A program made the position numbers and the translations under genes. The notes under the pieces were generated by a model. The model had not been told where the DNA came from. It was given only the letters and a program-made list of their open reading frames with translations, and did no database searches. This document shows positions 2,369 through 61,800 of a DNA stretch of 64,000 nucleotides, one piece after another. Source of the DNA: Amoebophrya sp. A120 (lineage: Eukaryota; Protista; Dinoflagellata); assembly GCA_905178155.1 (NCBI GenBank), contig CAJINV010000011.1:1887939-1951938 (forward strand), read 5' to 3'. Each line of letters begins with the position of its first letter. The first letter of the stretch is position 1.

Positions 2369-4287
2369 CTAGACGCCTGACAGGGTCTGGATCAAGTATT
2401 GCGCCACCGTGAATGAAAAGATCAGTTTTGGTCCGACCGCGCCGCATTTTGGAACCACTCCCTTGAAAAATCCGGAAGGTCCCTCCTCTTTCAGCAGTTC
2501 CTTTGCAATCGTGACACCGTTCTTGTCGGCCGAGAATTTGCCGCTCTGAATCCGGGTTTTAATCACGTCGCACGGGCAGGCCACGACAATGGACGCCAAA
2601 GACCCACAGGTGCTCGTAATTGCGGTCTGCAAAAAGGTTGGTTTGTTCTTGTTGATGGCCTTCGCAGAAGATGAACCGGAAGAGGTGGGTGTGGACTGCG
2701 GCTGTAAAAAAACGCGGTCGCGCACGGCCGCGTTAACCCCGAAAAGGGCGAAGGAACCTGACAAGGATTATAGGAGTTCAAAGATTGGAACCGGTATAAT
2801 TGCGGTTGGGATTACCGAATTGAAGTAGAAGATCCCAGAGAAAATAATAAATGACGTTTTCACATTCGGAACAAGCACTTCTTCTTCATGAAAACTGCAT
2901 CCTGCCTACCTGGAACGTTCCTCATCACCGTCCACTGCCATCCTGCATATAAATTTCGCAGGCCCTCTTGTCGAAACACCGCCACAAAATTTCGCCCGCG
3001 ATACGTGGGGTTTGTCTGTGCCTTAATCTTCAACACGTCGAACGGTAGCAGGAGCACCTCTCCAGCACCCATAAAAGCACCGGCAACGCCGTCGCACAGC
3101 AGGCCGCGGCGAACCGGATTCGTTTTTTGGTCGGACCCGAAAAACCTGCAATTCTAAACTTACTGTTCATATAATGAAATTCAAAGTTACAGAGCAGCCT
3201 GAACTACAACAGCTCGGGCTAGGATGATCACTAAAAATCACATAAATTCGTAATTGTTCTGCAATCGTGCTGCCTGAGCTTGGTTTTAATACTTTCTACC
3301 TCTCATACGGGCGCCGCACCAAATCCTTCACGAAGGGTTGGCCGCCGAACTTGTAGCTGCGTTGGGAGATCTTGTACACCGCCCCGTACCCCAAACCCGG
3401 AAATAGGGACTTGACCCGCTGTTGCATACGGGCGAAATCGACGAAATTCGGCGCCGTACCTAAACCTCCTCCACCCCCGCCCACCGTCGCCGCGGCCGGT
3501 TCGTGAAACAGAACTATGGATCTGTCAGGTTTGAAATCGACAAAGTTGAAATAATTAAATATGCCATGCATAAAATGGATGCCAGTTGAAGCCCGGTTTC
3601 TAAGTGGCGCATGACAAATTTGCGTAGAACCTAAATCCAGTTTGTCATGCTGTTTGGGTAAGGGCGACGCCTTTTGTCATGCTACTTTAGTAGCTCTATT
3701 TCTACCTCTCAACAGGCTTACAATATGCCTCCCTTGCGTCCTCTGCAACAGAGGCAGATTTTGCGTTGTATTTTATGCATTACAAACTATTTCAACTTTG
3801 ACGATTTCGATCCTGACACATGCATATGAACCTCGCCGTAATTATTCACAGACAGCCGGACCGGACTGGCCATCAACCGTTTCGCTACCGTGTCGATATG
3901 CACTGCAAAAATGTGTGGGTCTGGAAGGACGCGAACTTGTCATGCTAAGTCTGGACAGTACAAAAATTTGCGTTGCAAGATCACCAAAAACTGTCCACTT
4001 GTGAACAGGTTTAGAGGCAGTTTGTCATGCAGGCCAGACATGAGAGAGACTTCGCAGAACCTGTCATGCTAGGTCCTGCATTCCAGACCTCACGGGGCAT
4101 GGAAAATATGCATGACAAGCTTGCAATCTCCCAGACCCAGACATTTTTGCGCTTGATAGTCGACAGGGTGAAACAGCGCAAGCTCCAGTGCCCCCGCACA
4201 CCCGGCGCCCAGAAAGCGGGCAGAGGTGGTGGACGCTGGCGTGGAAGATCCACTGCTGCTAGTAGTACTGGCGGTGACTACAGTCAT
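2369..4287 (-). CDS. GGC1: Mitochondrial GTP/GDP carrier (SLC25, Ggc1/Yhm1-like), 5 exons
   Basis: Spliced product ARFLGAGCAGALELALFHPVDTVAKRLM...SLFPGLGYGAVYKISQRSYKFGGQPF...GAGEVLLLPFDVLKIK...RNVPGSFALFG...FFKGVVPK...GPKLIFSF closely follows yeast Ggc1p. Introns: introners 3897-4158 and 3515-3826; GT-AG introns 3146-3299 and 2758-2909. Confidence 0.9.
3515..3826. mobile_element. Introner family B (non-canonical intron in GGC1)
   Basis: TIR TATGSATSTGTCAGG..GAAATCG.CAAAGTTGAAATA; DR AGAAC/TGAAC; removal gives YGEV-LFHEP. Confidence 0.9.
3897..4158. mobile_element. Introner family A, subtype A1b, reverse orientation (intron in GGC1)
   Basis: TIR TAT..GCAAAAATGT.TGGGTCTGG; perfect DR GTCGA; removal restores the HPVD-TVAKRLM carrier motif. 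Confidence 0.93.
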
Positions 4288-4899: not shown

Positions 4900-6472
4900 C
4901 TAGTTGGTCGGCTTGAGCTCCGCCTTATACCTTTTCACCGCGTCCACAAGCCACTTGAGCCCAGGCTCGATACCGACATTATGCAGCGCGTCCGAGGGGC
5001 TGATATGCGGTTGAGGTTGTCGGGTATCGTATGTACTATCAGCAGTGGTTGTATTTCGAAAATTTACAGCTGCGAGACGAAACCACTCGCATCTTTGGTG
5101 TCTGACATCTAGATACACAGGATCACGTGATGATCGGGTGAGAAGGGACGAATCCAGTTCGAGAACGACAACAACTAGCAACAAATCAAACTTACAAGAT
5201 GTTCCAGGGTCGGTCCCGTATGGTCTCCAGTGTGAGCGCCTTCATGCACTCCAGTGGCTGCGCGGCTCCTGGGACGTCCATCTTGTTTGCAAAGACCAGT
5301 ATTGGCACCGGTCGCTCTCTATCAAATGCAAATATGTCTGAGTCTGGAAGAATGCAAGATTTTTTGTCATGCATATTTGTCATGACCCATGATGCCTGTA
5401 ATGCAGGACCTAGCATCGCAGACTTTTAGAGGGCTTCCTGATGCACCTTCCGCATGAGAAATGCCCTGCCCGTGTAGCACAAACGGCGCCCCTTTTTCTG
5501 GTCATGCAATACAAAATTTTTTAGAGTCCAAAAACAGCATGACAAGTTGCAATCTTCCAGACCCAGACACTTTTGCAGTTGATACTCTCGAAGTCGGTGG
5601 TTGTCTAGCAGCGTGTCAAGTTCGTCCTATGCTGTGCAAAAGTAATATCGCACTCGTACTTAATTGCTTTTATGCATTACAAATCTTTTTCTTAAGGCAA
5701 ATCCGCATTACAAATTTGGTTTGTAATGCTGAGAGAATTTGTATTGCAATTTATACTAGTACGATACTTTTGCAGTTCATACGTCCTTCGCTACGGCAAA
5801 CCGCAACTTGTCTGTCGCATCGATCACAAACACGATGCCCTGAAGAAGTTGTATTTTTTCACTTTAGATTAGAGTAGATCTACATTTAGCGCCAGTCTTT
5901 ATTTTCCACATTTTTACCCCACGTGTACTACACGGAGTCATGTTTTTATGCGTCCTTACTTGCAATGTGTAGATACGCCAACATCTACTACATCGATGCT
6001 ATGCAACACATACTATCAAAATCGAACTACCTCGCACTCGTCCACCTGACTTTCCCAGAGGTTTCGATACTTCCCCTGCCCCGACATGTCCACTGCCGCG
6101 ATTTGTACGCCGCCCTTCGTAAAAACTTCCTCGCTGTATCCCACGGTTGGCGCGGTGCTCAGGGAAACCTAGGTCGTGCGGGTACTTATTTGGGAAGATC
6201 ATGGAAGGTCACTCAACTACAACTATGCACGAAGCCGAGGAACAGGAACAGATGAAAGAGCTGCTGTCTCCGAGAATCAATGAAAGAACTGCTGTTTATG
6301 GATGAAGACAGAAACGATTGCAATTCATACACTAAAATTAAAACACACCCACCTTCTTTGGTTTCATCATGTTCAGAATCGTCGTCTTTCCGCTGTTGTC
6401 CAAGCCGACCATGAGTATCTTCACCTTCGTGCCCTCGAAGAACCTCCCAAACAGCCGCGAGAAAAACCCCAT
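4900..6472 (-). CDS. ARL6: ADP-ribosylation factor-like GTPase 6 (BBS3), 6 exons
   Basis: MGFFSRL..GLDNSGKTTI..PTVG..DMSGQGKYRNLWE..IVFVIDATDKLRFAVAKDELDTLL..PILVFANKMD..RPWNIFPSDAL. GT-AG introns 6169-6352, 5840-6030 and 5000-5195; introners 5628-5781 and 5320-5584. Confidence 0.9.
5320..5584. mobile_element. Introner family A, subtype A1a (intron in ARL6)
   Basis: TIR TATCAA.TGCAAA..TGTCTG.GTCTGGAAGA; perfect DR CTCTC; removal gives RLRE-RPVPILVFANK. Confidence 0.93.
5628..5781. mobile_element. Introner family I (intron in ARL6)
   Basis: Ends TATGCTGTGCAAAAGTA.. and ..AGTACGATACTTTTGCAGTTCATA; perfect DR CGTCC; removal gives VAKD-ELDTLL. Confidence 0.93.
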
Positions 6473-24580: not shown

Positions 24581-27333
24581 TCACACGAGTTCCTGTTTCA
24601 CGTCTGAGAGCGCGTAATTCTCTACTTCTTCGCCGTTTTTCCTTTCGCCGTCAAATAAATACCGACTTACCTGGTCTCGCTGCCGGGCTTCGTAAAATTC
24701 GTCCCCGTCTAACCCGGCGGTGAAATAGTGGTGTCGAATTCGGTGCACCGCTTTCTCCCACGTCTTCTTGCGCTTCTCGACGCGCTCAGCTTTCGTGAGA
24801 AGTTTGTTTGGTTTTTCGTTTACCTTTGGTGCCGACGTCGTGCTGTCAGCGGTACCAATAGAAGTGGTCCTGCTCTCTTCATCTACGTCAAGAACTACAC
24901 GACCCCCGGTGCTGGCGTCTTCACCTTTACCTTTCCCCTGTAGTTCTTGCACCAGCTTTGTGCCCCCTCGTGAAGACGTCGACACTGTTGAAGGTTCCGA
25001 ATTCCAGATCGGACTAGTGTGGTAGTAGAGCAAAAAGAAGCTCTGCACGGCGCGGCAAAATTTCAGAAACCCCGGATTCCAGCGCGGGCCGTCGTCAGTG
25101 GTTGGACCTGCTGGAGGTGCATTATCGTCCTCGTAGTCAACTTCATCCTCCTCCCCCCCTGATTCCCCGCCTGTGAGGTGGTGCACCTCCTGCTCGTCCA
25201 AGGTGGGGACCTCCTGTAGGGACCTCCTGGAGGTGGTCGTCTTATTTTTGTTCCCTTTCGCGGTTTGGGTCTTGGATTTCGAAGAGTTCGACGCAGCAGG
25301 GCGCTTTTTCATCTTTTTCGGGTCTTGCTTCGCCGGCGTCCCGACTGGACGACCATCTTCAAAGTGGTGGTCTTGTTGCATCTTCTTTTTAGAAGGCCCC
25401 CGTTCTGCTGCACGATTTGGATCATCATTCTGGTACACGGCTCCGTGGTCTTTTGGAAACAAGGGTTCCAATTTGGCGAACGATTGTTCAAATTCGCGCG
25501 CAACTTTCTCGTTCGTCAGCCTCTCCAGCGCTTTTCCGTCCGGCAAGATCTGGCGTAATTGCGTGTACTTCATCCGCAAATCGTACACCAAATCTAGCAG
25601 GTGCGACGATTGCAGGCTGGCGAGTAGATTTTGATTTTCTAAGTCTAATTCTACTACTTCCGGGGAATTCACCCCAAAATGATTTTTCTTCCGCGGTTCG
25701 TGTGGACCTTCTTGCGCAGTTGAAATAATTTGGAGATTCTTTCCCCCCAGCGCCACAGCAGCTCCTTTGGTTTGGTCTTTGCTTTGGTTTGCTCTTTTTT
25801 CGCTTGTTTCGGTTTCCATGAAGACAGTGGACCACAGAAGCTGCAGTGGCGAAAAAGGCGTCAGCGGGAGGCTAAAGAGACTGCTCGCTTCCTCCAACAG
25901 CCACTGAATATTAGCCGTCACAACTTCTGTACATGTGGACGATGTTGACCCAGCACCATTACCGGCAAGAACATTGCTAGTACCAGATAATTTTTGCTCC
26001 GGAAGATGATGATGCACAATGCCGCTCCGCTCGAGCAAGCGTCCGGCCTCCTCCAGCAAGACTGACACTCTTCGTACCACCAAAAGGTGCTGCCGCGAGA
26101 AGCCCTCGAAACGCGGGAAGCCCGCTATCAACTGTAAAAATGTCTGGGTCTGGAAGAATTCATGTTTGTCATGCTTGTCTGGCATGACTCTTAAGTCTGT
26201 CATGCACGTTACCCAAGAGCTCCGTTTTTCTGTGATGCAGAAGCGCAGTCTGTCATGCAGAATAGGCAACACCTAGGAGCTCAGAAACTTGTCATGCTGA
26301 GCCAGCATTTGTAGCCTCATCATGAGACGCCACCCAGCATCACAAGTTCCCAGACCCAGACATTTTTACATTTGATACCCGCGGTGTGGAGGCACTCGTC
26401 CAGCTCGTCGGCAAGTTTGTGTTGCTGCAGTTCCAGGTATCCTGAGTAAAAACGTACCCACACCAGAGTCAGAATGGGGAATCTGCTAGACAAATCAGCC
26501 AGCTTTGGTTGTTTGGCATGACAAGTTTGTCCGCGTAGTGTAGTGCTGTTTGAGCTAGTTTAGCAGCATTACAGATCTAGTATCTCGTGCTGATTGGAGC
26601 ATGACAAATTTCAAAACCGCATTAGAAAATGCTTCTCATGGGGCTCCGCATGAGAAACATTTTAAGCATGCAGAGTTGCATGACAACTATGGTGTGGGTA
26701 CGTTTTTACTCAGGATACCAGGGCGAGGAGAGTCTGTTTCATTTTCACTTCTTCATCCTCGGACGTCGTGGTCCCCATACTGCATGCTGAAGTGACGTTC
26801 TTTCTACTGTGGTCTACAACTTCGACCTCGGCCTCGCTAGTACTGTAGATCTCCAGCCAGTGGCAGTAGCTAATCGCCCCCACTTCTGCCGATAGGGCCT
26901 CGCGAGCCTCGCGGAGGTCGAGTTCCGCCCCGTTATGGTAGTTGTTCATTTGTGGGTTCTCGTCTAGCTTTATTTCATCAACGACCATGTTATTTCTTGC
27001 GGTGGGCGAAGACTCCTTTGCGGGTGACAGACTTGTAGCCTTCGTCAGCGTGGTCATCGGTTCCTGGCTTGACACCCCCGTGCTCCTCCTCCCAAAAGCG
27101 TCTGAGACCTCTGATGTGTGCGCTAGAATGAAGGAATGAACCTTGCCGCAAAGGTAGCCGAAGGAGAATAATGCGCACAGAGACCCGATCAGAAGCGCAA
27201 TCACCTCGTGAGGACGCCATGCTATTCTTCTAGTAGGTTTGTTTTCATCCCCATGATCATGACTTTTTGGTGCCGGCGTTTTTGCCGGCTGAGCTCCTTG
27301 ATCTAAAGGAGATTCGATGGATATGGCTTTCAT
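24581..27333 (-). CDS. Hypothetical protein (~740 aa) with an N-terminal TM helix; 3 exons
   Basis: ORF 26710-27333, a mini-exon (ELQQHKLADELDECLHTAG) and ORF 24581-26125 join in one frame once two introners are removed. Confidence 0.75.
26126..26377. mobile_element. Introner family A, subtype A2
   Basis: TIR TATCAA.TGTAAAAATGTCTGGGTCTGG; perfect DR CCCGC; frame restored. Confidence 0.93.
26438..26717. mobile_element. Introner family D (opposite orientation to 48064 and 51055)
   Basis: Perfect 28-bp TIR TATCCTGAGTAAAAACGTACCCACACCA; perfect DR CCAGG; frame restored. Confidence 0.95.
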
Positions 27334-31525: not shown

Positions 31526-34500
31526 CTAGGAGCTAGTCGTGCCCAATGAAAGCGGAAAATTCGAGCTCCCTGCGCTGCCTGGCGTCATTGCGAAATTCGA
31601 TGTGGATGCGGTGGTCGGGGTTCCTTCACACGGCGTCGCACTATCAGCCGCCGACCCGCATTCCGAACAAGCAGGAATTTCTTGCATCAACGCGGTCGTA
31701 GAAGTCTTGGACTATTTTCGAAAAATTTTATTGAGTTTGATATTCGAGACAATTTTTTGATGCTGGATTTTATCTATCATGCGCCAGACCAGGTGAAATG
31801 AGGATGTGCTTTCTGCGATAATATTTCTACTTAGACACTTCCTTCTTCGATTCTGAAGACACAATCGAAATAAGAGCTCCTGCCACAAATAATCAGATTG
31901 ATGTCAGAGGCAGAAGCAGAACTGGTCGTGGTCGTGCTTCAACCAAAAATAAAAAAATCATACCCGAAGATGCTCCCCCGGCGCCCCCGTGGCACGTCCC
32001 TTTATGCTCCCTAAGAACATCTCGTCGGAGGTTGCTTTGGAATTATAAACTGAAGAACACGACGACGATGATGAATAGGCCGTGTTCATTCCAATCGTTC
32101 CGCCCACCATCTGTAGTTCCGCATGATCATCTTGCGGCTCCTTGGACACGAGAGAAGAAGAAGAAGCGCTCGCACAGTTACTAGTACCGGTTGTGGAACT
32201 ACTAGTTGCATAACTGAGTAACTGCACCCCGGTCGGCCCCAGTAGCTCGGTCAACAAGTCTTCTCCACCAGGGTGAAGACCGGTCCCCTCCTGCTGGCCT
32301 GCGGGAGCTTTGTTCATCGCGCTCGTCGTGGTAATGGCATCAGCAGCAGAGGCTCCTGTCATGGCTTTATTGTGGTGCACGTCAATGTCCTTCACGATGA
32401 TGTCGTCGAAGACATCCTTGGTTGTTTCATCTGCTCCGACCTGCCGCAACCATGCACACAAATCGGTCTCCTCGCCATCAGCTCCTTCGTGGATAGTACT
32501 AGTAGTACCATCACGAGGACGATAATTATTGCTGTCCCGCCCGCTGAAGGGGAAAGGACTGCTCTTGGACGTAGCCTGTGTTGGATTTGTTCAATATGAA
32601 GTTTTTTTGCTGTACAAAAGAGACTAGAGCGGGATGGTCAACCACTAGAGCGGGATGGTCAACATACATGCGGAAAAAGTAAAAGAGCAGAAAGGAAGAT
32701 TGCGCAAATAAATCCACCATGCACAAGTAGTATACCCTCATTTCCGTTACTTCGTCCCACACATCCGGTGACAAATCCAGCTTCGGAAAACACTCCGCCC
32801 ACCGCACCAAGGCGTCCGCGCCCCGCATGCCGAGCCGCTCCCAGACCTCGTTCACGCTCATCACCAGTGGTCGACGCATCCGAACGACTGGATTTATTTT
32901 GATTCCACAACGATTTCAACAAACTCGGTTCGATACGTGGTCAACGATATTTTTACGGTTGAACATTGAAGAAATTCGATTGACGTAGTGCACGGTCTAC
33001 TTACTACTGCGCCAAGAACAGAAGAAATTGAAATCATCCAGAAGATGCACGAAAAGCCCCGGCCGATAGGCTGAAAAATGTAAATGTTTAAAAACTATAG
33101 ACAGACAGTACATTTGACGTAATCCCAGAAGGCGTGGGCATACTCGCTGACCCAGTGCGATACGACCGCCAAGGCCCGGCGCGACCGCGGGTGCCGGTTT
33201 TGGATCCAGATGGTGAGCTCCCCGCTGGCGCAGTCCAACCAGACGCCGCCCCGGTGGGGGTAGTCCAGGAACTGCCGCAGGTGCTGGATTATGCATTGCA
33301 AATAAAGTATCGCACTCGTAGTACTCGTAGGCATACAGCTTCACAAATCTTATTCTTGAGGTCGCAAATCCGCATTGCAAGTTGTATTTTTCACGCTGCG
33401 GTAATCTGTGTCTGTCATGCGATTTATACTAGGGCGATCATACTTTTGCAATGCGTATGGATCTGCACAGCCTTCTGGTCCATGAAGAACGGCAACGCCT
33501 CTCGGGGAATGAACAGCACATCGTAGTGGGAGCACTTGTGCTGCAAAAAGTGCGGGGTAGGCGGGATGAGGTACTGGTGCGGACTCCCCCCCGCGGACAC
33601 GATCGGGTTAAAGCCCCGGTGGCCGTGATTGTTGCCAAAACTCATGGCCGTGCTGATCGGCCCGCGGTCGCCGAAACCAGTGGAGGCAGAGCCTGAACCT
33701 TTCATATTTCCGCCGCCAAGAAAGCCCCCAGCCCGACTGCTGGCGTTGTGTCCACCTCCCCGTGTGGCGGCGGAGGGAACAAACATCATGCCGCTGCCAC
33801 GGTGGTGGCTACTGATCATGCTCCCCATGCCGCCCACCCGGGAGCAAGAACCTGCTGGTGCCCCTCCATAGGGTCCACCTCCGCGAGACGACATCCGAGT
33901 GGAACAATTGCTGTGACCACGCTCCCCGAGGACGCCAGCCTGGTGCGGAACAAAGCCGCCCGCGGTACTAGTACAGCCGGCAGCCCCTCCTTCCAGCAAC
34001 TCCAACCGCTGCAGATCAGCGAAAGTAGTCGGTTGGCCGCCACGAATTATGTGCTTGTTATTTACTAGCGCGTTCATGGCGGAAAGCGGCATCCGCCCCC
34101 GCGCAGTGAACCCGAAGCTGGGCATGAAGGGAATCGCACTGGAGCGAAACCGGCTGTAATCAATCTCGCCGTACATATTTGTGTTGTCCAGTCGGGGCTT
34201 GTTTACGTTGTTTCCTGCTTGTTGTTGTTTTCTCCCACCGCTGCTCGCATGATCAAAAATATCAGGGACCGACTTGTTCATATCTTCACAAGAGGTCCTC
34301 GCTGTCTTTTTACTACAATTTTCATTGTTTTCGCTTCCCAGCTGCGGCGGCCCTGTTTCTTTCATCACGTCGATCTCGCCCGCTTTTCCTTGTTTCGTTG
34401 TAGCAGCTGTATCTTGCACGATTTGGATTTTATCCTGGAGTTCTTGTTGCCCATCCTCCTTCATAAATTGGCCGCTGCCGACGTTTTCATCACCGCGATC

Positions 34501-46278: not shown

Positions 46279-46479
46279 GACCCGCGGATCTGTAGAAATG
46301 CACGGCGGATCTGCGTTCGCAAGGGTAACGGGTTCGAACCGCCAGTGCCAAACGACCCTCCTTCCCAAAGCAAGGCGAGACCGCATGATTCCATACTCTC
46401 GCTGCTATCGCCAACGAGAATACAATCAGGGCTGCCACCACTGTCCGCACCACGGATAAACCAGAGATACCCAAAACTG

Positions 46480-47362
46480 TCCGCAAAGCGGATTGCGCCA
46501 AACTTTCCGCCGCACGGATGAGACGAAACTCTCCGCCAAGCGAATCTATAGCCAGAACTTTCAGCCGAGCGGATGAGGCCAGACTTTCCGCCAAGCGGAT
46601 AACCAAACTTTGCGCAAAGCAGGTGAGACCAAACTTCCCGACCAGCGGATAAACCGAACTTTCCGCAGAGCGGATGAGGCCAGACTTTCCGACAAGCGGA
46701 TAGCCAAACTTTCCGCAGAGCGGATGAGACCAGACTTTCCGCCAAGCGGATGAGACCAAACTTTCCGCAAAGCGGATGAGACCAGACTTTCCGACAAGCG
46801 GATAAAAGAGACTTTCCTGAGGCGGATGGACCAAACTTTCCGCAAAGCGGATGAGACCAGACTTTCCGACAAGCGGATAAAAGAGACTTTCCTGAGGCGG
46901 ATGGACCAAACTTTCCGCAAAGCGGATGAGACCAGACTTTCCGACAAGCGGATAAAAGAGACTTTCCTGAGGCGGATGGACCAAACTTTCCGCAAAGCGG
47001 ATGAGACCAGACTTTCCGACAAGCGGATAAAAGAGACTTTCCTGAGGCGGATGGACCAAACTTTCCGCAAAGCGGATGAGACCAGACTTTCCGACAAGCG
47101 GATAAAAGAGACTTTCCTGAGGCGGATGGACCAAACTTTCCGCAAAGCGGATGAGACCAGACTTTCCGACAAGCGGATAAAAGAGACTTTCCTGAGGCGG
47201 ATGGACCAAACTTTCCGCAAAGCGGATGAGACCAGACTTTCCGACAAGCGGATAAAAGAGACTTTCCTCAGGCGGATGGACCAAACTTTCCGCAAAGCGG
47301 ATGAAACCAGACTTTCCGACAAGCGGATAAAAGAGACTTTCCTGAGGCGGATGGACCAAACT
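46480..47362. repeat. Satellite: degenerate ~25-bp monomers grading into about 8 near-perfect 75-bp higher-order units
   Basis: Unit = gcggatggaccaaactttccgcaaa (25) + gcggatgagaccagactttccgacaa (26) + gcggataaaagagactttcctgag (24). Confidence 0.95.
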
Positions 47363-47673: not shown

Positions 47674-50600
47674 TCAAAAGCCAATGAGCTCCTGGGAGGT
47701 GTTATGAAAGTGCACAACTCCCCCTCCCCCTCATTTGTCATGCAAAATACCGATTCCATGCTCTGCCTTTTAGCACTGTTTGCATGACAAGTTCTGGCAG
47801 CCCAAATAGCACTACAATGCTGTGCAGATTTGTCATGCAAAACCGGCATTCCTGCTGACGCTTGTATTCCTGTTATCGCAATACAAATGAGGGGGAGGGG
47901 GAGTTGTGCACATTCATAGCTGTTGGCCCGGTGGTCCCGCGCTAGGCGGCTGTAGATGTAGAAATGCAGTGCGTCGTAGCCGTGGCTGGTCGTGTTCAGC
48001 CAGCCCATACCGTCGGCAAATTCCTTGTACAGGGTTGCGTACCGCCGGATCAGAGCCGACCCCTATCCTGAGTAATAACGTCCCCACACGACCATAGTTG
48101 TCATGCAGATTAGCAAGCACAGGAGCATTTGTGATGTGGACCCCCAAGAGAGGCACAACTTTCAATCGTGTTTTGGAAATTGCAATGCTAGAAACAGGAT
48201 GAGGAGATGGATTTGCTATGCGGATTCCCTTGCTAAACTGCACTACAATACAGCCTGCAATTTGTCATGCGTGACTCGCAAAACTTCTAGGTTTGTGTTG
48301 CAAAATCTCTATCTTGACAGACTATCGGGTCGTGGGGACGTTTTTACTCAGAATAACTCCCCGTCCGTTCTCTCCTTGGCCACTTTGATGGTGCCTTATC
48401 AAATGTAAAAATGTCTGGGTCTGGAGGATTGCAAGGTTTGTCATGCACATTTTGCATTACCCGTGATATCTGTGATGTATGCACCAGCATCACAAATTTT
48501 TTGCGGGCATCTTGATGCCTATCCCGCATGAGAAATCCCCTCTCCGCGGAGCAAAAACTGGACGCCTCTTGTTGCTCATGCAATACAGATTTTTTTGGAT
48601 TCCAAAAATAGCATCACAAGTTGCATTCTTCCAGACCCAGACATTTTTACATTTGATATGCCTTCTTGCCGTGCCATCTCCAGTACCAGTGCAGCGTCTG
48701 CGTCTGCGTATCCTGTGCAAAAGTATCGTACTCGTATAAATGCAAGTCTTGCATTACAAATCTTTTTATTAAGGCAAATCCGCATGACAAATTCCATTTC
48801 TCATGCTAGGGGAATTTGTATTGCATTTGCAATTTATACTAGTACGATACTTTTGCAGTTCATACTGCGAGGGCCGTCACGAGATTTTTCTGCGCCTGCC
48901 GGATGGAAACCTGATGGTGGAGTTTTAGGTAGTAGACCTCCACATCAGGACCTCTTTTTTTACTCGATAATTTCATTTCCCTCACGATCATCTTCGAACA
49001 GCACATCAATCAGCCTACTGTCGTCAAGTGTGTGTGAGGATGCGAGCTAATTCTGACTCTGAGCATATTGAAAATGATGTAGGTACAAAAAGCCGCCATC
49101 ATACATCAACATGAAACCTGCTGTCTATTCCTGGCCTTCTGTCGTCTTTGTTTCTTCAGGAGCTTGGCAATGACAGCCTCGTCAAACGCCGATGGCAGCG
49201 AGATCTTGCGCAGCTGAAAGTCGACCATCGTGAAGAACCCGTCACTATGAAGTGCAAAAATCTCTGCTTTTGGAAGAGTGTGCTTCTTTGTCATGCACGT
49301 GTTGCATGACCCATGACGCCTGTGATGCGTGCCCTTGCATCACACATCTACTTTTGAGGGCTTCCTGATGCCGACCCCGCATGACAAATGCCCTCTCCGC
49401 GTGGCAAAAAAAACTTCCTCTCGGTCTTGCTGCTCATGCACTACAGAGTTCCTTTAGAATCCAAATGCAGCATCACAACTTTCACAGATTATATTTGCAA
49501 TGCATAGTCACCCTCCGAGGCAAACATGGTCCCCACATCGTTCCGCAGCTCGTTGCATCCTGTGCAAAAGTCTCGCACTCGTAGTAATCGCAATTATGCA
49601 TGACAAGTCTCTTTCTCAAGGTAAATCAGCATCAGAAATTCCTTTTGTCATGCTTAGCAAATCAAAATTTGTAATGCGGTTAGTACTACTAGTACGATGC
49701 TTTTGCATTTGATACGTTGCTGATCTGCACGCGTTTCTCGAAAAACTGCAGCGTGTGGAAGCGCACCGAAACCTCCTTGACTTTCTTCTCGATGATCACC
49801 CGCAACCAGTCGCGCCACCGCGTATGGAAACGGTACGAAAAAAGGTCGTCTATCGCTTTCAGTTCGTTATAATCGGCAAGTAGTGTAAGAGAGGCAAAAG
49901 CCGAAGTGCATTCTGAAGATTCTTGGACTTCTTCCTGCTTCATGAATCTCTACCTTACGCTTGTTTTCTTTCTCATATTCATGCGCATGAGCAGTACAAT
50001 TGTAAAATAACTTACTTGCGATGAAAGAAACTACCTTGGCGAATGACTACTATCTATGTGGCATGAAAAAAAGTGTGACGAACTGACAATGATAGGAAGA
50101 ACATTCTTCGTGTGCATTTCCATACTGCAGTCCCCAGGCGTAGTAGAGTTGCGGCAGCATTCCTCTCACAAGCCGGATTGCCGTATCCAAGAAAAAAACC
50201 CGCGTTGACGGTGTCAATTTGTAATTTTCGAGAGCAGCGCACGAGGAACTCATGGTCATGTTTTTTCTTTTCTCCAACAAGAATAAATATAGATGGTGCT
50301 TCTCATTATTCGACTGAAAAAGCTTCTGACACGACAGAGGATTTTTCTTGGATACTGCAACGACAGCTGTTTATTTCATGGGCACAAGGCCCAAAATTTG
50401 TTCGGAAAGAGGTCTAACAAATCTATTTTGCGCTTCAGTCTTTCACAAGGAGATAGATGACTCATTTTCTATTTTCATCAGATGAAAGCATCATCAACTT
50501 CTAACTATGTCTTCTAACTTCACCACATGCATTATGCAATTCCAAATCCGAAAAAAAACACGCATATATCAAAATTTTGAAACAGAATGTAGTATATTAC

Positions 50601-51528
50601 GTCGAGAAACACGGACTGCCCGTTGCTCGTCCAGACGGACATGCTGGAGCCGTCTTTCCCACTGGGCAGCCACTCCAGGACAATTAAACTCTGCGAGTAG
50701 GATATTACAATGAAAAATGCCCCCGTCCCTGAACTTGAAAGCATTTGTATTGCAACCCTTTCCAAATGAAACATTCGCCCTCTTGCATGTATCAGCGTCA
50801 CATATTTCCGATCGTGAATAGCAAAACTTTTTATTGCAAAAGATCCCAGCAAGAGCGGTGCTTGTCATGCAAGCGATGCGAAATACGACTAGAATCTGCA
50901 TCAGAAAGATTCATACTCCTTTCATGGATGACAAAAAGTTTTCATTTGGAAACATCGCATCACAAATTTTTGCAACTTTGGGGGTGGGGGGCGCTTTTCA
51001 CTGTAATATAGGACAGGATCGAGCGGCCGAGCCCGATGAGAAACCGGCCGGAGACATCCTGAGTAAAAACGTCCCCACCCCATAGTTGTCATGGAGATTT
51101 GCGATTACAGGAAGATTTGTAATGCGCATCTTCGTGAGAGGCATTTCCAATCGCGCTTTGGAATTTGTAATTTTTCTGTAAACGGGATCAGCAGATGGAT
51201 TTGTGATGCAGCTGCACTTGCTAAACTGCACTACACTACGGACTGGAATCTGTCATGCGTTGCTCCCAAAGCTTCTGGGTTTGTGTTGCTAAGTTCCCAA
51301 CTTGCCAACTGTGGGGTGGGGACGTTTTTACATATGATAGGAGTCGTCGCGCGCCTCCCGCCGAATTTCGTCGCGCGATACGGTTTTGAACGTGTCATCG
51401 TATACCAATCCGTAGTACCGGGGTTCCAGCACGTCAAATGAGCAAGCAAACAACACGATAGACGTGATGAAGACGATCAGGCAACAGCCACCCGCGAGGG
51501 GCACATCGTATTCACGAAACTCGCCCAT
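47674..51528 (-). CDS. SPFH/band-7 (prohibitin/stomatin superfamily) membrane protein, 13 exons
   Basis: Reconstructed: TM helix, SFDVLEPRYYGL..SGRFLIGLGRSILSY..WTSNGQSVFLDLSLQ..LYYAWG..FFEKRVQIS..FQLRKISLPSAFDEAV..coiled coil..ELIGF*. Ten introners plus GT-AG introns 50367-50600 and 48911-49117. Confidence 0.85.
47703..47918. mobile_element. Introner family C
   Basis: ~36-bp TIR TATGAA.GTGCACAACTCCCCCTCCCCCTCATTTGT; DR GGTGT/GCTGT; empty site at ~46200. Confidence 0.95.
48064..48355. mobile_element. Introner family D
   Basis: TIR TAT.CTGAGTAA.AACGTCCCCAC; DR ACCCC/ACTCC; frame restored. Confidence 0.92.
48397..48658. mobile_element. Introner family A, subtype A1a
   Basis: Perfect 29-bp TIR TATCAAATGTAAAAATGTCTGGGTCTGGA; perfect DR TGCCT. 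Confidence 0.95.
48709..48864. mobile_element. Introner family I (paired type)
   Basis: TATCCTGTGCAAAAGTATCGTACT and AGTACGATACTTTTGCAGTTCATA ends; perfect DR CTGCG. Confidence 0.93.
49246..49506. mobile_element. Introner family A, subtype A1a (degenerate TIR)
   Basis: Interior aligns with 5320 and 48397; perfect DR GTCAC; removal gives SEGD-GFFTMVDFQLR. Confidence 0.88.
49556..49714. mobile_element. Introner family I (paired type)
   Basis: CATCCTGTGCAAAAG and GATGCTTTTGCATTTGATA ends; perfect DR CGTTG. Confidence 0.9.
49823..50124. mobile_element. Degenerate introner, family H
   Basis: TIR TATGGAAA.G..ACGAA; DR CCGCG/CTGCA (3/5); removal of element plus 5 nt gives WGLQ-WRDW. Confidence 0.7.
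50184..50354. mobile_element. Degenerate introner, family F
   Basis: 13-bp TIR TATCCAAGAAAAA; DR eroded, but removal of element plus 5 nt gives LSLQ-IRLVRG in frame. Confidence 0.7.
50703..51008. mobile_element. Introner family E
   Basis: TIR TATTACA.TGAAAA..GCCCCC; perfect DR TAGGA; frame restored. Confidence 0.9.
51055..51339. mobile_element. Introner family D
   Basis: TIR core GTAAAAACGTCCCCACCCCA; DR GGAGA/GGAGT; removal gives DDS-GRFLIGLG. Confidence 0.9.
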
Positions 51529-52192: not shown

Positions 52193-54165
52193 TCAAATTT
52201 GTTTCATTCGACTTCCTCTATTCGAACCCGCCATGCCGTTCCTGCCTAGAACCTCCCGCGCTTCCCGACGCTTCACCAGCAGCGAGTGCGCCCAACCCAC
52301 TAGGCCGAACTGCAAGAGAAAGGCGGCAATTTCGTCCGCGTGGTCGACGCAAAAGAGCATCACAACGAAGAAACCCGCGCAGGCTAGGAGCAATAGGAAG
52401 AACAGACAGGCGTTGGACTGGAAGATGGATTTTTGCTGCCTGTACTTCTCCTCGTCCGCAATCACCAAACTGGTTTTCCAACGCAAAAGTCCAATTACAT
52501 CTTCAACGTGGAGGTAGTACTACTCGCGGTGAAGTAAAAATGTAAATCGCGGTAGTTTTTTTGAATGACACACTTTTCTTTTTTTGTTTTTCTGCACTTT
52601 ACCTGACACAGCACGACCAGGTCGACGGTTTCTGGGCAACCTCTATACGAGGTTGATCATGCAGTTTGAAATTGAATTTATCTGAGTAGTACTTTACTAC
52701 TACGATTCTATGTGAAAGAACTTTGGCACGGTCGATACAGTCGACGGGGGCGCAAAACTTTCGCCGTAGCTTCACCGACAAGTCTCGGATATTCTCGTCC
52801 GCTACTCCACTGCTCCTATCCACCGGGTAACACGCGAGAATGCTGGTTTCGCACTTCTGCCGGACGCTTTTCAGCCGCTGGCAGTGCGCATCGTGGCTGG
52901 ACCGCTGCTCGCTCTCCGTCGGCTGTGCCTCCGCCGCGGGGAGAGGTTGCAGCTCGTCGGGGCTGCTGTTCACATCTTCAACGGGCGCTGGTCTTTCACC
53001 TGGCGGTGGCACCAGGGATGAAGCAACTTCCTCCACAACCTCAGGTGTAACTGAGGACTGCTCCCGTTCTGGCGGCGCTCGTTTCTCGGCGATCGTCTTC
53101 GGACACGCGTCAAAAAGTTCGCAGTAGTCCGCTATCAAATGCAAAAGTATCGTACTCGTTTAAGACTAAGTTGCAGTCATGCATGACAGATCTGGCTTCT
53201 TAGCAAATTCCGCATCACAAATTCCATTTCTGCTTCTGGAAAAATTTGTAAATGCTATTTTTAAAAATTTATACGAGTACGATACTTTTGCGATTCATAT
53301 CCGCACTGCACGCCTTATTTCTCGACGCGAACACCACGGAGTCATTGTCGTTGTTGCTCTGCGGCTGCTCGCTTTCTCCTTCGAGCAGCGCACCGTTCGC
53401 CGCGTAGGTTTTATTTGTCGGGTTCGCTTTTGATGTTGCAGCATCTTCCAGTTTATTTTTTTCTTGTGCTGACGACGCAATACTGGCGGAGGAGCTCCTG
53501 CTTGACGTCAGGGTTCCGGAAGTAGCACTGGCGGCGCCGACCATGGGCTTCGTGTAATTTCCGTACAGGTCGAAATGGACCGTTTCCAAGTGCAGGTCCA
53601 TGTAGTGCTCCGACCGGAATTTCTTGCCGCAGATCAGGCACTCCCAGTTTGCGTAGGGCGCGTGGCCGCCGCCGCGGGTGCGGCGTTTACGCAACTCCTG
53701 CTCGGCGTAGAGATCGTTCGTAGCGAGGAAAGGACACGAGGCGGGAAAGGTGTAGCCCAGTTGCAGCCCGGGCTGTGGAGTGTTGTTTTTTTTGTACGCA
53801 TGTGGTGATGAAAAAATACGAGGCTCTGTAGCAATTGCAGATGCACAATGAACGACTTGATTCCTGTGGTTGTTCGTACGGAATTTTCATACAACCCCAA
53901 GTGGGTTCTTCTTCTTCAGCACGAGCACGACTCTGCCCCCCGCGTAGATGATAACAAGAGAAACTACGACGTTCTTTTCTATCATAGGTACCTGCAAAAT
54001 TTGCTTTTCAATTTCCGTGCGCACCCGGCGCGACAGCGGGCGGCTACAGGGGTGCTTCAGCGCGGTGCGCTCGGCCGTGTTGGTATCGCGATTGCGCGAT
54101 GCGTGGCTGGACAGGGTCAACAGCAGGATGCGGGTCAAACAACTCTTCACGCTGAAAGCAGACAT
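52193..54165 (-). CDS. C2H2 zinc-finger protein with signal-like N-terminus and C-terminal TM segment, multi-exon
   Basis: HPCSRPLSRR..CPF..NDLYAEQE..WECLICGKKFRSEHYMDLHLETVH..CSADYCELFDAC matches the layout of a plant/protist C2H2-like family. Start codon and last junction inferred. Confidence 0.75.
53133..53299. mobile_element. Introner family I (unpaired)
   Basis: TIR TAT.AA..GCAAAAGTATCGTACTCGT; perfect DR TCCGC; removal gives CSAD-YCELF. Confidence 0.93.
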
Positions 54166-58800: not shown

Positions 58801-61800
58801 CTACACCGAGCGTGACCTCCCGTTCTTCTCGCACGGACTGCACCGGGCAGGATATGAGAGCGCACAACTCCCCCTCCCCCTCATTTGTATTGCATGAACA
58901 GCAACCACACAAGCGCTGGCAAAGAATAGAAAAAGATGCGGCTTTTGCATGACAAATTCCTAGAGGAGCGCAGTAAGTCTTGGCGTTCGGCATCTGTCAT
59001 GCAAACAGTGTTAAGAGGCAAAGGTTGGATTTGGAATTCTGCATGACGAATGAGGGGGAGGGGGAGTTGTGCACTCTCATACAGGATCGTTGTAGTTCAG
59101 AAACGTATTTTTCACCCGCATGGATTTCGACGCGGCTCCCCGCACCGTATCAAATGCAAAAGTGTCTGGGTCTGGAAGATTGCGAGATTTGTCATGCTTG
59201 TCTGGCATGACCAAAAAGGTTGTGATGCGTGTCCAAGAAGAGACCCTTTTGCCTGTCATGCAAAAACGCAGTTTGTCATGCGAAACACGCAACACAAAGA
59301 AGCGCAGAGATTTCTCATGCTTGGCTGTGCATTACAGAGCATTCACTATTCCCAACGCAGCATTACAAGTTTCCACATCCAGACACATTTGCAGTTGATA
59401 CACCGGACTCGCGAGCAGCGTCGGACCAACGACAGCGGACACAGCCGACAAAGGAGCTGGTGGTGTTTTAGGAGTTAGACATTCACTCACCACCTCCCTC
59501 TGGGCCACGACAGTAGTTTTCCCCATTATTATAGTCGCACGACCGACACACAACGATCGACCCCGCAAATACACATTGTCAACATCGTGCGGAAGATCAT
59601 CACGCTAGTCCTGAAGTCTGATCGTAGTTCAATGCGTAGAAAAAAAAAGCAAAAATAAATACAGCTAATTTGTTGTCCTCCTCTTGCATTTGCGGCCACT
59701 GCGGTGGGGGAGGGAAGCAACGGCGGCGGCGGGTTGATACCGCTTGCAATCGCCGTTGTCGCAGTCTGGTAGCAGTTCGCAGCGAGGGCAGCAGCAGCGG
59801 TTGCGGGGTTGTTTACTGTGCCACTACTGGTTGCACTGATATGCATGTGCAAATTTTCTATCAACCCTGGTCTGGCGGAAATGATCTTCTCGACAGCGGC
59901 AGATATGCTTCTTGCAACAAAGATTTTCGTCTGGCATTACACAAGCCATGATACAGCATCACAGATCAGAATTTGAATTCTTTTCATCTAGGTCGATAGA
60001 AATATTTTTGCACTTGATAAGCGAACTGATCATACGAGTGCTGATGTGCGGCGGCTGCCGCTTGTACGCCCGCCGAATAGAACGCCGAAGAGGCAGCTGC
60101 GGACAGGTTTAACGAGCCTGGCATGTTGTGCGCCGCGGCCGCAACATGATTAGCAGCATGGTGGTTCGTCGTGCCAAACTGCAGGTGGTCGAGGTTACTA
60201 GCAACATGCTGATGCGCAGTAGCTCCTATTCCTCCCGTCAAATTACTTGCATTGTTGTTCAGGTCAAAAGCCGCGGCGGAGAAGTAGCTGAGCAGAAAGG
60301 GGTCAAATGCGCTCGCTGGCGGCGGGGGCAGCACTGGTACATTCGGATTAAATTGGTTCGTCCCCGCCGCAGCTGCAGCAGAGAGATGGTGGTGCGCGGG
60401 TACATGATGCGCTGGTGGGTGGTACTGGAGGCTGCTGTTGAACAGTAAATCACTCAACGTACTCGCCGAAACAGCCGCGTGGTTGGGCAGGCAATTGTTT
60501 TGGGCGGTGGTCGAGGGTGGTTGTAGTAGCATTGGATTGTTCCCGTTGTTCCAACACGGGGAACCTCCGACGTTCTGGTGGTTGAATTGGCTGCTCAAAT
60601 GGTTCAAGTTCGCGCCGAGCGGAAGATCGTGTTGAAGTTGATGGTGAGTGGGAACGACCGCAGAATTTGTTGTGCATGTGCCACCACCAGCCACTGCGTT
60701 GTAGTAATTATTCCCCCCAAGAACGGCACCTCCACCTGCCGCTCCTCCGCAGTAAAGACTGTTGCTCGCAGATGTTGCGGTGCCGAAATGTCCATTGGCT
60801 AGATTCGCGAGTTGTGGCGCCAGGTGGCCGGATGAGTTGTTAGTATTTTCCAGGCAGGTGGAATTGTAACCACCGGCGGCTAGATTGTTCAAAACCGTGG
60901 AGGCAGCATTCTGGCTGATATTCATTGCAAATATGTCTGGGTCTGGAAACTTGTAATCCTGGATTCGGAATAGTGAATGCTCTGTAATGCACAGCCAACC
61001 ATGAAAAATATCTGCGCTGCTTAGTGTTGCGTTTTCCGCATGACAAACTTCGTTGTTGCACGACAAGTACAAGGGTCACTTCTTGAACACGCATCACAAA
61101 CTCTCCAGTCATGCCAGACAAGCATGACAAGCCTTGCATTCTTCCGGACCCAGACATATTTGCAATGCATAGCTGAGCAGCTGCTGCAGTTGTTGGGCCG
61201 CGTTTGATGCATTGAGACTACAGCTGCCCGTCGGCATCAATCCCTGTGGCTGCGGTGGTTGTGGCACGTCGTGGACGATATGTTGTGAACAACTAGTTCC
61301 ACCTCCGCCGACGGCCATCGCGTTGTTTGTGCGCGAAGAAGGCAAATGATTCAGAGATGCGTGGTTCGTTGTCGCTGTCCCAGAAGTTTGGGACAGAAGT
61401 TGCTCCAAGAAATCATTGGACAGTAGCCCTGTCGCAGACGCTCCTCCGGGCTGTTGTTGTTGATGCGACTGCACTTGCAGTGTGGATGTTGCAGACGGCG
61501 GAATGTGCGACTGAGCGATTGAGCCACACAGGTTATTTGGGTTCGCAGTTAAGCCTGGTGCTCCACCTCCCGGGAGGTGGGCAGCCGCGGTTTGACTGTC
61601 CATACCCGCTGGTGCGGCGGCCGAAGATTCAGCGTTTCCTCCAGTAGCGGGACGACCCGTCGCGGCGCCCCTGTGGTCGTGCTGCAGGTTAGAATTATTC
61701 GCCGGCGGTTGTTGTGCACCTCCATTCTGCTGGTTCTGCTGGTTGCTACTGGTCTTGTCATCGCCAAGAGCAGTGGTATTGCTCTTGTCCACAGAAGTTG

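What the first reader, a model, noticed from the sequence alone, without database searches (positions are those of the whole stretch)
5320..5781. Paired introners: subtype A1a is followed 43-50 nt later by a specific I subtype (ARL6 instance)
Seen: all three A1a copies (5320, 48397, 49246) have a family-I element immediately to their right, in the same order and orientation, with gaps of 43, 50 and 49 nt. Each partner has its own 5-bp DR. The spacer is unrelated host exon (here the conserved ARL6 residues KDELDTLL), so it did not travel with them. The three paired I copies share a left end (T/C)AT(G/C)CTGTGC that the two unpaired I copies (33290, 53133) lack; A1b and A2 copies have no I neighbour. 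Inference: two elements are co-mobilised and inserted about 45-50 bp apart in one event, or one recruits the other. This would be a bipartite intron-generating system that carves out a micro-exon. I know of no description of it. Sample size is only 3, and two cases are in one gene.
Basis: partly seen in the sequence, partly recalled or inferred. Interest (0 to 1): 0.92.

Follow-up and report, generated by a model that had tools for sequence, protein, structure and literature searches.

The report
Introners packed around short micro-exons
The three A-then-I introner pairs are real. They are samples of a genome-wide habit of this parasite's transposon-derived introns to sit 35-75 bases from another introner of any family, not a dedicated two-part A+I system.

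Summary
The window has three A copies, each followed 43, 50 or 49 nt later by an I copy. Each element has its own 5-bp target duplication, and the spacers are host coding sequence that stays in the mRNA.

The interpretation (a specific, co-mobilised A1a+I system) does not hold.
- The genome matches Amoebophrya sp. A120 by assembly metrics.
- Of the 20 closest genome-wide relatives of the 5320 A copy, only 2 have an I on that side. The others have A, P, E or N there, or nothing.
- Family-label permutation in 264 kb shows no A-I excess: 9 tight pairs against 7.8 expected, and 6 against 6.4 without the window.
- Genome-wide exact-motif counts give 969 A-A, 984 A-I and 151 I-I close pairs, only 1.29 times random mixing for A-I.
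- Partners differ in divergence, and A-A partners are no more alike than random A copies.

What is real is generic:
- Introners of all 16 sampled families pack at 35-75 nt, with almost none closer than 35. Of 167 site distances, 54 lie in 30-65 nt, against 19 expected with local density kept.
- The CCTGTG end of I faces a close neighbour of any family 1.8 times as often as its other end.

The scan noted mixed-family pairing elsewhere in this genome. The cause of the spacing is unresolved.

The parts
5320..5584 (.). A-family introner (265 bp) inside the ARL6-like gene. Its 5-bp duplication CTCTC lies at 5315-5319 and 5585-5589.
   Evidence: It is 92-94% identical to 39 other copies genome-wide.
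5585..5627 (-). Micro-exon of 43 nt between the elements (38 nt once one duplication copy is removed). It encodes DELDTLLDNHRLRE of an Arf/ARL6-like GTPase.
   Evidence: The 14 codons fill Arf profile positions 102-115, between the flanking exons at 83-101 and 116-152.
5628..5781 (.). I-family introner (154 bp). Its duplication CGTCC lies at 5623-5627 and 5782-5786. The left end tatgctgtgc faces A.
   Evidence: It is 88-93% identical to 39 other copies.
48064..48355 (.). P-family introner, 41 nt from the next A. This makes the cluster a triple, P-A-I.
   Evidence: It is absent from RNA contig X1 record 1.
48397..48658 (.). A-family introner with duplication TGCCT.
48659..48708 (-). Micro-exon (50-nt gap) retained in the mRNA.
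   Evidence: RNA contig record positions 829-950 account for the short exons between 48058 and 49113.
48709..48864 (.). I-family introner with duplication CTGCG. The left end tatcctgtgc faces A.
49246..49506 (.). A-family introner with duplication GTCAC.
49507..49555 (-). Micro-exon (49-nt gap, 44 nt in the mRNA).
   Evidence: Record positions 657-700 lie between the pieces 49113-49240 and 49715-49816.
49556..49714 (.). I-family introner with duplication CGTTG. The left end catcctgtgc faces A.
3515..4158 (.). Another close pair of other families: D 3515-3826 and A 3897-4158, gap 70.
26126..26717 (.). Close pair A 26126-26377 and P 26438-26717, gap 60.
50703..51339 (.). Close pair H 50703-51008 and P 51055-51339, gap 46.
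58853..59400 (.). Close pair E 58853-59081 and A 59148-59400, gap 66.
63472..64000 (.). Close pair D 63472-63748 and E 63789 onward, gap 40. It is cut by the window end.
33290..33457 (.). Unpaired I copy whose left end is tatgcattgc.
53133..53299 (.). Unpaired I copy whose left end is tatcaaatgc. It is removed precisely in RNA contig X1 record 2, with a 391-nt exon on one side.

Best explanation
The window comes from a genome whose assembly metrics match Amoebophrya sp. A120. Most of its introns are short non-autonomous transposons ('introners').

Shown here. All 16 sampled families share one build: ends TAT...ATA, terminal inverted repeats, and a 5-bp target duplication with no sequence preference. 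The element plus one duplication copy is removed from the mRNA. The three A-then-I pairs are ordinary examples of a generic packing. An introner of any family, in either orientation, very often lies 35-75 nt from another introner (30-70 nt in the pre-insertion sequence), almost never closer than about 35 nt, and rarely at 150-300 nt.

Inferred from partner differences. Partners arrive independently and at different times.

My committed reading of the cause. A new insertion is favoured, at the DNA or chromatin level, in a zone about 30-70 bp beside a resident introner end, or both elements hit one accessible zone of about 100 bp. Insertions closer than about 30-35 bp are lost because so short an exon cannot be spliced. 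Both steps are inferred.

Family I adds a polarity: its TATCCTGTG end faces the neighbour about 1.8 times as often as its other end, whatever the neighbour's family. That polarity, plus the abundance of A, is why A-then-I with the left end of I facing inward is the commonest A-I layout.
For: Genome identity. The assembly is 115.5 Mb. Contig C5 is 9,243,444 bp, equal to the published scaffold N50. Contig C18 is 1,463,775 bp, equal to the published N90.

Generic packing.
- 188 elements of 16 clusters were annotated in 264 kb. Of 167 gaps between consecutive elements, 52 are 35-70 nt and only 5 are under 35, in every family and orientation combination.
- In pre-insertion coordinates, 54 of 167 site distances lie in 30-65 nt, against 18.9 +/- 3.8 (maximum 34 of 1000) when each site is jittered by +/-150 nt. 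Distances under 30 number 5, against 18.5 expected.
- Genome-wide exact-motif counts give 969 A-A, 984 A-I and 151 I-I facing pairs, with reversed-pattern controls of 0. Gaps of the first-listed pairs are almost never under 35 and have their mode at 50-69.

No A-I specificity.
- 2 of the 20 closest relatives of the 5320 A copy carry an I on that side.
- Label permutation gives 9 against 7.8 expected, and 6 against 6.4 without the window.
- A-I is only 1.29 times the random-mixing value of 765.
- Of 24,246 A ends, 4.1% face an I end and 8.0% face an A end.
- The nearest relatives of each 'A1a' copy mostly lack an I.

Independent arrival.
- Partner divergences are uncorrelated: Spearman -0.11, p 0.48.
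- A-A partners are 0.717 identical against 0.690 for random A pairs, p 0.29.
- Spacers are unique host sequence, apart from segmental duplicates.

Polarity of I.
- The left-end 20-mer occurs 3,847 times: 384 have an A within 0-90 nt and 906 have any introner start at 30-75 nt.
- The right-end 20-mer occurs 3,737 times, with 208 and 500 respectively.
- Chi-square is about 51 and about 130.

Splicing. The RNA contig lacks all introners in 47.5-51.7 kb and keeps the micro-exons.
Against: - The cause of the 35-75 nt band is not shown.
- In the sample, the I polarity tracks transcription. When I is read right-to-left, its downstream flank is tightly occupied in 12 of 19 cases and its upstream flank in 3 of 18. 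That fits an RNA-level (splicing or retention) effect at least as well as DNA-level targeting.
- A-I pairs are 29% above random mixing genome-wide, so association is not strictly neutral. This may instead reflect depletion of A-A pairs.
- Divergence from a mixed-family consensus is a rough clock.
- 20 of the 21 sequence pieces were centred on A copies, so sample frequencies are ascertained. My library also misses low-copy families; unannotated introners lie at 49822-50125 and 50184-50354.
- Pairs are somewhat over-represented relative to a geometric cluster-size model: 39 against 28.7 expected, p about 0.06.
Confidence: 0.85

Rival explanations
1. A1a and a particular I subtype form a bipartite system that is co-mobilised and inserted 45-50 bp apart in one event.
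For: - All 3 'A1a' copies in the window have an I on the same side, in the same orientation, at 43-50 nt.
- In those three pairs the partners have similar divergence: 0.080/0.107, 0.123/0.101 and 0.216/0.174.
- The left end of I is genome-wide the preferred facing end.
Against: - 18 of the 20 closest relatives of the 5320 copy lack an I on that side.
- No enrichment under permutation.
- Only 10.0% of I left ends have an A within 90 nt, and the same 1.8-fold polarity holds for all neighbour families.
- Other A-I pairs have discordant divergences, such as 0.073/0.382 and 0.264/0.148.
- Two of the three cases lie in one very introner-dense gene.
Confidence: 0.03
2. Retention, not targeting. Insertions land anywhere in exons. 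Those that land 35-75 nt from an existing intron are spliced better, through cross-exon help between neighbouring splice sites or hairpins, and survive. Closer ones fail.
For: - The sharp lower limit near 35 nt looks like a minimal-exon limit.
- The I polarity is directional with respect to the transcript: 12 of 19 downstream against 3 of 18 upstream.
- Asymmetric families show orientation bias relative to transcription (I 19:8, P 14:5, D 7:1), while the symmetric A family does not (38:38).
- A non-library intron lies 41 nt from I 48709, by my arithmetic on the RNA contig.
- Splicing in this organism is unusual: only 30% of introns are GT-AG and no U1 snRNA was found.
Against: - Introners with long flanking exons are common and are spliced, for example I 53133 beside a 391-nt exon and E 47703 beside exons of 141 and at least 168 nt. 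A near neighbour is therefore not required.
- About a third of elements (66 of 188) have no close introner neighbour.
- A roughly 20-fold density contrast between 35-70 nt and 150-300 nt would need very strong selection.
Confidence: 0.3
3. Generic double insertion. One transposition event, or one transposase burst on one chromatin particle, places two elements of any family 30-70 bp apart. The analogy is the two Ty1 integration hotspots per nucleosome, about 70 bp apart.
For: - Pairs are the dominant cluster size: 39 pairs, 9 triples and 3 quadruples, against 28.7 pairs expected under a geometric model.
- A 5-bp duplication is typical of copia-type integrases (my own knowledge).
- Integrase-related introners are reported in A120.
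- Ty1 has two hotspots per nucleosome about 70 bp apart (PMC3545840).
Against: - Partner divergences are uncorrelated, and same-family partners are often very different, for example 0.353 against 0.142 and 0.249 against 0.065. Simultaneous arrival is therefore unlikely as a rule. Two separate hits on one particle remain possible.
- Spacing is a broad 35-75 nt band with no helical or other period.
- The chromatin of this lineage is atypical, and no occupancy data were available.
Confidence: 0.1
4. Chance. Introners are merely dense in some genes, and the three A-I pairs and the short gaps follow from density alone.
For: - The gene at 47.5-51.7 kb is extremely dense, with about 12 introns in 4.2 kb.
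- About 1.2 A-I adjacencies are expected in the window from genome-wide rates, so 3 is not extreme.
Against: Keeping local density (jitter of +/-150 nt) still gives only 18.9 +/- 3.8 distances in 30-65 nt, against 54 observed, and 18.5 against 5 below 30 nt. Genome-wide gap histograms peak at 50-69 nt instead of being flat.
Confidence: 0.02

Closest known systems
Introner elements of Amoebophrya sp. A120 (Farhat et al. 2021, PMC7789003; Gozashti et al. 2025, PMC12130899)
   Same: - Same genome by assembly metrics.
- Short repeated introns with 8-20 nt inverted ends and 3-5 nt direct repeats at the exon/intron borders.
- Non-canonical borders and no coding capacity.
- 'Tens of introns in a single gene'.
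   Different: Term searches in the two Amoebophrya papers held found no description of the 35-75 nt mixed-family spacing, the exclusion below about 35 nt, or the end polarity of family I. I searched for: short exon; adjacent, nearby, tandem, clustered. Farhat et al. also doubted transposase-mediated mobilisation; the uniform 5-bp duplications seen here argue for it.
Micromonas and Aureococcus introners with nucleosome-linker insertion (Huff, Zilberman and Roy 2016; cited from memory and through PMC9860276)
   Same: - Non-autonomous DNA transposons with inverted ends and target duplications that become introns.
- Insertion sites are non-random at the chromatin scale.
- Nearby insertions leave intervening segments of a characteristic size.
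   Different: There the intervening segments are nucleosome-sized, about 150 nt (from memory; the paper was not readable here). Here they are 35-75 nt, too short to hold a nucleosome. Here many families share one end type and duplication length.
Ty1 integration: two hotspots per nucleosome about 70 bp apart (Bridier-Nahmias and Lesage 2012, PMC3545840)
   Same: - 5-bp duplication (own knowledge).
- Pairs of preferred sites a few tens of bp apart, set by a chromatin particle.
- Integrase-related introners are reported in A120.
   Different: - No transposase was identified here.
- The spacing is broader and shorter: 30-70 bp in pre-insertion coordinates.
- No link to Pol III genes.
- Chromatin was not examined.
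Composite or macro-transposition of two neighbouring elements (IS-flanked composite transposons; Ac/Ds alternative transposition; own knowledge)
   Same: Two transposon copies close together with facing ends.
   Different: A composite would carry its spacer along. Here every spacer is unique host coding sequence, and each element has its own duplication.

Membership tests
Amoebophrya introner elements (MITE-like introns) | Terminal inverted repeats at the intron ends | tested here: met
   At least 12 of 16 terminal bases are complementary in 115 elements, against 0 in the reversed-sequence control.
Amoebophrya introner elements (MITE-like introns) | Short direct repeat (target duplication) flanking each copy | tested here: met
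   A perfect 5-bp duplication flanks all 115 strict elements, including five of the six in the finding. The sixth, I 49556, has CGTTG on both sides.
Amoebophrya introner elements (MITE-like introns) | Lies in a gene and is removed from the mRNA | tested here: met
   RNA contig X1 record 1 skips every introner in 47.5-51.7 kb, and record 2 skips I 53133. For the ARL6 instance this is inferred from Arf profile continuity: 83-101, then 14 codons, then 116-152.
Amoebophrya introner elements (MITE-like introns) | Many dispersed copies | tested here: met
   There are 24,246 A-type end 13-mers and about 7,600 I-type end 20-mers in the genome.
   2 of 20 closest relatives carry the partner. Permutation gives 9 against 7.8. 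Only 4.1% of A ends face an I. The neighbours of I left ends include the A, M, I, E, D and K families.
   There is no correlation of divergence, Spearman -0.11. A-A partners are no more alike than random A pairs. The clock is rough.
   Exact gaps spread over 30-75 nt with no period. A-I gaps run from 10 to about 170 nt, with their mode at 50-69.
Linker-targeted introners (Huff 2016 type) | Nearby insertions leave nucleosome-sized segments | tested here: not met
   Segments are 35-75 nt.
Linker-targeted introners (Huff 2016 type) | Insertion into nucleosome-free linker DNA | not testable with these tools
   No chromatin occupancy data were available for this organism.
Integrase-type (Ty1-like) paired hotspots on a chromatin particle | Transposase of the retroviral-integrase kind with a 5-bp duplication | tested here: inconclusive
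   The 5-bp duplication is met. Gozashti 2025 reports integrase-related introners in A120.

The most novel reading that the evidence does not exclude
Resident introner ends, most strongly the TATCCTGTG end of family I, bias where the next introner lands to a zone 30-70 bp away. This could work through a bound transposase or end-binding factor, or through a chromatin particle with two accessible sites. Intron gain in this genome would then be partly self-seeding and would systematically manufacture 35-75 nt micro-exons. The ruler would differ from the nucleosome-sized one reported in other algae.
Probability: 0.35. Interest if true: 0.7.

Novelty: new variant of a known kind. Interest (0 to 1): 0.45.

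Why it matters
The specific claim of a two-part A+I intron-making system would have been new, but it fails.

What remains still bears on how introns spread. In a genome where most introns are recent transposons, new introns cluster at a characteristic sub-nucleosomal distance from older ones, avoid distances under about 35 nt, and show an end-specific polarity.

That gives a measurable spacing rule for testing whether target choice or splicing-based survival shapes exon sizes. It also warns that gene models here will miss many micro-exons; exons of 11 to 51 nt are confirmed in one transcript.

Tried and rejected
Data limits.
- Fetching flanks of all 39 close A relatives failed. Genome-wide tests therefore used exact-motif counts only.
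- The raw 2026 RNA runs X9 and X10 gave almost no reads on the stretch. Splicing evidence rests on contigs of X1, whose RNA nature is a guess by the tool. Its pieces lack all introners, and the DNA run X5 does not.
- The joints of DNA run X5 are other genomic copies of the families, not polymorphisms. No strain polymorphism could be assessed.

Analyses that gave nothing or were weak.
- Coding strand from open-frame length at single sites was unreliable; it miscalled ARL6. I used one strand per locus instead.
- Element-excised (joined) sequences were built only inside scripts, to measure open frames and site distances. They were not sent to any search. Exons were searched one by one by reference, and the joined protein was not searched.
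- There is no helical or 3-nt period in 200 exact gaps.
- Age does not differ consistently between the upstream and downstream member: in the 9 A-A tight pairs with a known locus strand, the upstream copy is the more diverged in 4 (tallied by hand).
- No paralogous filled/empty sites occur in the 264 kb.
- The cargo of the inflated A element at 42.6-44.0 kb has no long reading frame.

Literature.
- Huff 2016 could not be read.
- A search for introner together with micro-exon terms listed no paper holding 'introner' among the 15 shown.
Full report
WHAT IS THERE

The stated elements exist at the stated places.
- A 5320-5584 and I 5628-5781 are separated by 43 nt.
- A 48397-48658 and I 48709-48864 are separated by 50 nt.
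- A 49246-49506 and I 49556-49714 are separated by 49 nt.

Each element has terminal inverted repeats and its own perfect 5-bp duplication: CTCTC, CGTCC, TGCCT, CTGCG, GTCAC and CGTTG (read). The three paired I copies have a CTGTG-type left end, and the two unpaired ones do not.

The ARL6 spacer reads DELDTLLDNHRLRE on the - strand. The two flanking exons were searched singly by reference. They match Pfam Arf at profile positions 83-101 (E 0.026, weak alone) and 116-152 (E 1.7e-7), so the 14 codons exactly fill positions 102-115. I did not search a joined model.

WHOSE GENOME

The assembly has 115,520,608 bases. Contig C5 is 9,243,444 bp and contig C18 is 1,463,775 bp. Farhat et al. 2021 give 115.5 Mb, scaffold N50 9.243 Mb at L50 = 5, and N90 1.464 Mb at L90 = 18 for Amoebophrya sp. 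A120. That paper and Gozashti et al. 2022 and 2025 already describe introner elements in this strain, with inverted ends and 3-5 nt direct repeats.

ANATOMY OF THE FAMILIES

A scan requiring TAT...ATA ends, at least 12 of 16 complementary terminal bases and a perfect 5-bp duplication finds 115 elements in the window plus 20 fetched 10-kb pieces. It finds none in the reversed sequence. The elements fall into 16 clusters. A library search raises this to 188 copies, of which 81 are A, 27 are I and 19 are P. The duplications have no sequence preference.

A has nearly identical ends. I has two distinguishable ends: left TATCCTGTGCAAAAGTATCG and right TATG(A/C)A(C/T)TGCAAAAGTATCG.

SPLICING

Contigs of run X1 were laid on 47,500-53,400. 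The tool guesses that X1 is RNA. They give one 1,259-nt record on the - strand that omits E, P, A, I, A, I, H and P, while its record numbering leaves room for the short exons between them. One example is the 44 nt between A 49246 and I 49556. A second record omits I 53133.

By my arithmetic on the record positions, the exons of that gene are about 141, 36, 45, 41, 128, 44, 102, 51, 11, 102 and 41 nt. Removal is of the element plus one duplication copy.

TEST OF THE SPECIFIC CLAIM

The 20 fetched pieces are each centred on one of the 20 best genome-wide matches (92-94% identity) to the 5320 A copy. They are its nearest kin.
- On the side where the window copies carry I, 2 have an I in the same orientation (gaps 48 and 51). 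Four have another A, and one each has P, E or N. Eleven have nothing within 150 nt.
- Shuffling family labels over all elements gives 7.8 +/- 2.4 expected tight A-I pairs against 9 observed. Without the window the figures are 6.4 and 6.
- The nearest relatives of the other two 'A1a' copies also lack I partners.

Genome-wide counts used exact inner-repeat motifs, with gaps of up to 170 nt allowed. They give 969 A-A, 984 A-I and 151 I-I facing pairs, with reversed-pattern controls of 0.
- Random mixing predicts 2*sqrt(969*151) = 765 A-I pairs, so the excess is 1.29-fold.
- Of 24,246 A ends, 8.0% face another A and 4.1% face an I.
- The excess looks more like a shortage of A-A pairs than a special A-I bond. 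A possible reason is that two facing A ends are long inverted repeats that could loop out the micro-exon (inference, not tested).

TEST OF CO-INSERTION

Divergence from the family consensus is uncorrelated between partners of 46 close pairs (Spearman -0.11, p 0.48). The mean absolute difference is 0.109, against 0.102 for non-adjacent elements of the same locus.

Ten A-A partner pairs are 0.717 identical on average, against 0.690 for all A pairs (p 0.29). Spacers are unique coding sequence, apart from obvious segmental duplicates. Partners therefore come from different source lineages and probably different times.

WHAT IS REALLY NON-RANDOM

Gaps between consecutive introners show a sharp band. 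Five are under 35 nt, 52 of 167 are 35-70 nt, and the density per nucleotide at 150-300 nt is about twenty-fold lower. All family and orientation combinations take part.

In pre-insertion coordinates, 54 distances lie in 30-65 nt. Jittering every site by +/-150 nt, which keeps local density, gives 18.9 +/- 3.8. Distances under 30 nt number 5, against 18.5 expected.

The first-listed genome-wide pairs show the same pattern, with medians of 64, 61.5 and 74 nt for A-A, A-I and I-I and almost nothing under 35 nt. Two hundred exact gaps from the ends of I spread evenly over about 40-65 nt with no 3-nt or helical period. There is a band, not a fixed 43-nt ruler.

Cluster sizes are 66 singles, 39 pairs, 9 triples, 3 quadruples and 1 quintuple.

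For scale, the published median exon in A120 is 265 nt.

A REAL POLARITY

| End of I (exact 20-mer) | Copies in genome | A within 0-90 nt | Any introner start at 30-75 nt |
|---|---|---|---|
| Left | 3,847 | 384 (10.0%) | 906 (23.6%) |
| Right | 3,737 | 208 (5.6%) | 500 (13.4%) |

Source. By my arithmetic, chi-square is about 51 for A neighbours and about 130 for any neighbour. The ratio is the same (1.8) for A and for any neighbour, so this is a property of I and not of an A-I bond.

In the sample, with one coding strand assigned per locus, I is read right-to-left in 19 of 27 copies. In those copies the downstream flank (the left end) is tightly occupied in 12 of 19 and the upstream flank in 3 of 18. 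The symmetric A family shows no orientation bias (38:38) and no end bias. P (14:5) and D (7:1) show orientation bias.

MECHANISM

Shown:
- independent elements, each with its own duplication;
- precise removal from the mRNA;
- generic short-range clustering with exclusion below about 35 nt;
- the end polarity of I.

Inferred:
- a common type of transposase, from the shared ends and the 5-bp duplication;
- sequential arrival of partners.

Not resolved: whether the 35-75 nt band is made by target choice or by survival. I favour target choice beside a resident element, or within one accessible zone of about 100 bp, with loss of insertions that would leave an exon under about 30-35 nt. Singles with long flanking exons are common and are spliced, and the density contrast is very large. 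The transcript-directional polarity of I keeps the survival model alive.

One analogy worth testing is Ty1, which has two integration hotspots per nucleosome about 70 bp apart (PMC3545840). Integrase-related introners are reported in A120. This is a lead, not a test.

COMPARISON AND NOVELTY

The elements are members of the known A120 introners. The pair-specific system is not real. Term searches in the papers I could read found no description of the generic mixed-family packing or the I polarity. Huff 2016 and Roy 2023 could not be read.

Other first-stage notes of this scan on the same genome describe mixed-family pairs and a spacing rule. My results agree on mixed families and disagree with a near-constant 43 nt.

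LIMITS

- Only 264 kb of sequence could be examined in detail, most of it centred on A copies.
- Motif counts see only well-preserved ends.
- Strand calls are per locus.
- The age measure is crude.

Noticed in passing
window 50356-50366: An 11-nt micro-exon (TGCAACGACAG on the + strand) lies between an F-like introner at 50184-50354 and a further intron at 50367-50600. RNA contig X1 supports it with 11 letters between the joint 50179 -> 50601.
   Followed up: partly
window 49822-50125: An unannotated intron of about 304 nt has TATGGAAA...TTTCCATA ends but no perfect duplication. It is skipped in the RNA contig. My library misses such low-copy or older introners.
   Followed up: partly
window ~48906-49112: An intron of about 207 nt without recognisable introner ends lies about 41 nt from I 48709-48864, by my arithmetic on the RNA contig. 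Tight spacing may therefore extend to introns outside the repeat families.
   Followed up: no
window 46467-47363: A tandem array with a unit of about 75 nt shows up as self-matches at offsets of 75-450 nt. It is not an introner.
   Followed up: no
whole genome: A-A facing pairs are fewer than random mixing predicts relative to A-I and I-I, by a factor of about 1.3. Long complementary facing ends might cause skipping of the micro-exon. The A family has at least 12,000 copies (24,246 end motifs).
   Followed up: partly
264-kb sample: Asymmetric families show orientation bias relative to the coding strand (I 19:8, P 14:5, D 7:1, K 0:4, H 4:0). The symmetric A family shows none (38:38).
   Followed up: partly
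G000 C2:355305/363059, C2:2373794/2383945, C2:2769021/2778912, C3:2012338/2022325, C3:11664000/11676805, C2:11994463/11997478: Identical introner pairs with identical spacers recur 3-13 kb apart. These are recent segmental duplications that carry pairs with them. They are candidates for a filled/empty site comparison.
   Followed up: no
L019:3545-3880: A stretch of about 300 nt matches its own reverse complement at 75-80% identity. It is a large palindromic repeat outside my families.
   Followed up: no
L002:4861-5383, L009:9104-9588, L018:4568-5123, L020:2201-2696: A few pairs have gaps of only 11-22 nt, below the usual limit. Either the boundaries are off, or very small exons exist, or the two elements are spliced as one intron.
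   Followed up: no
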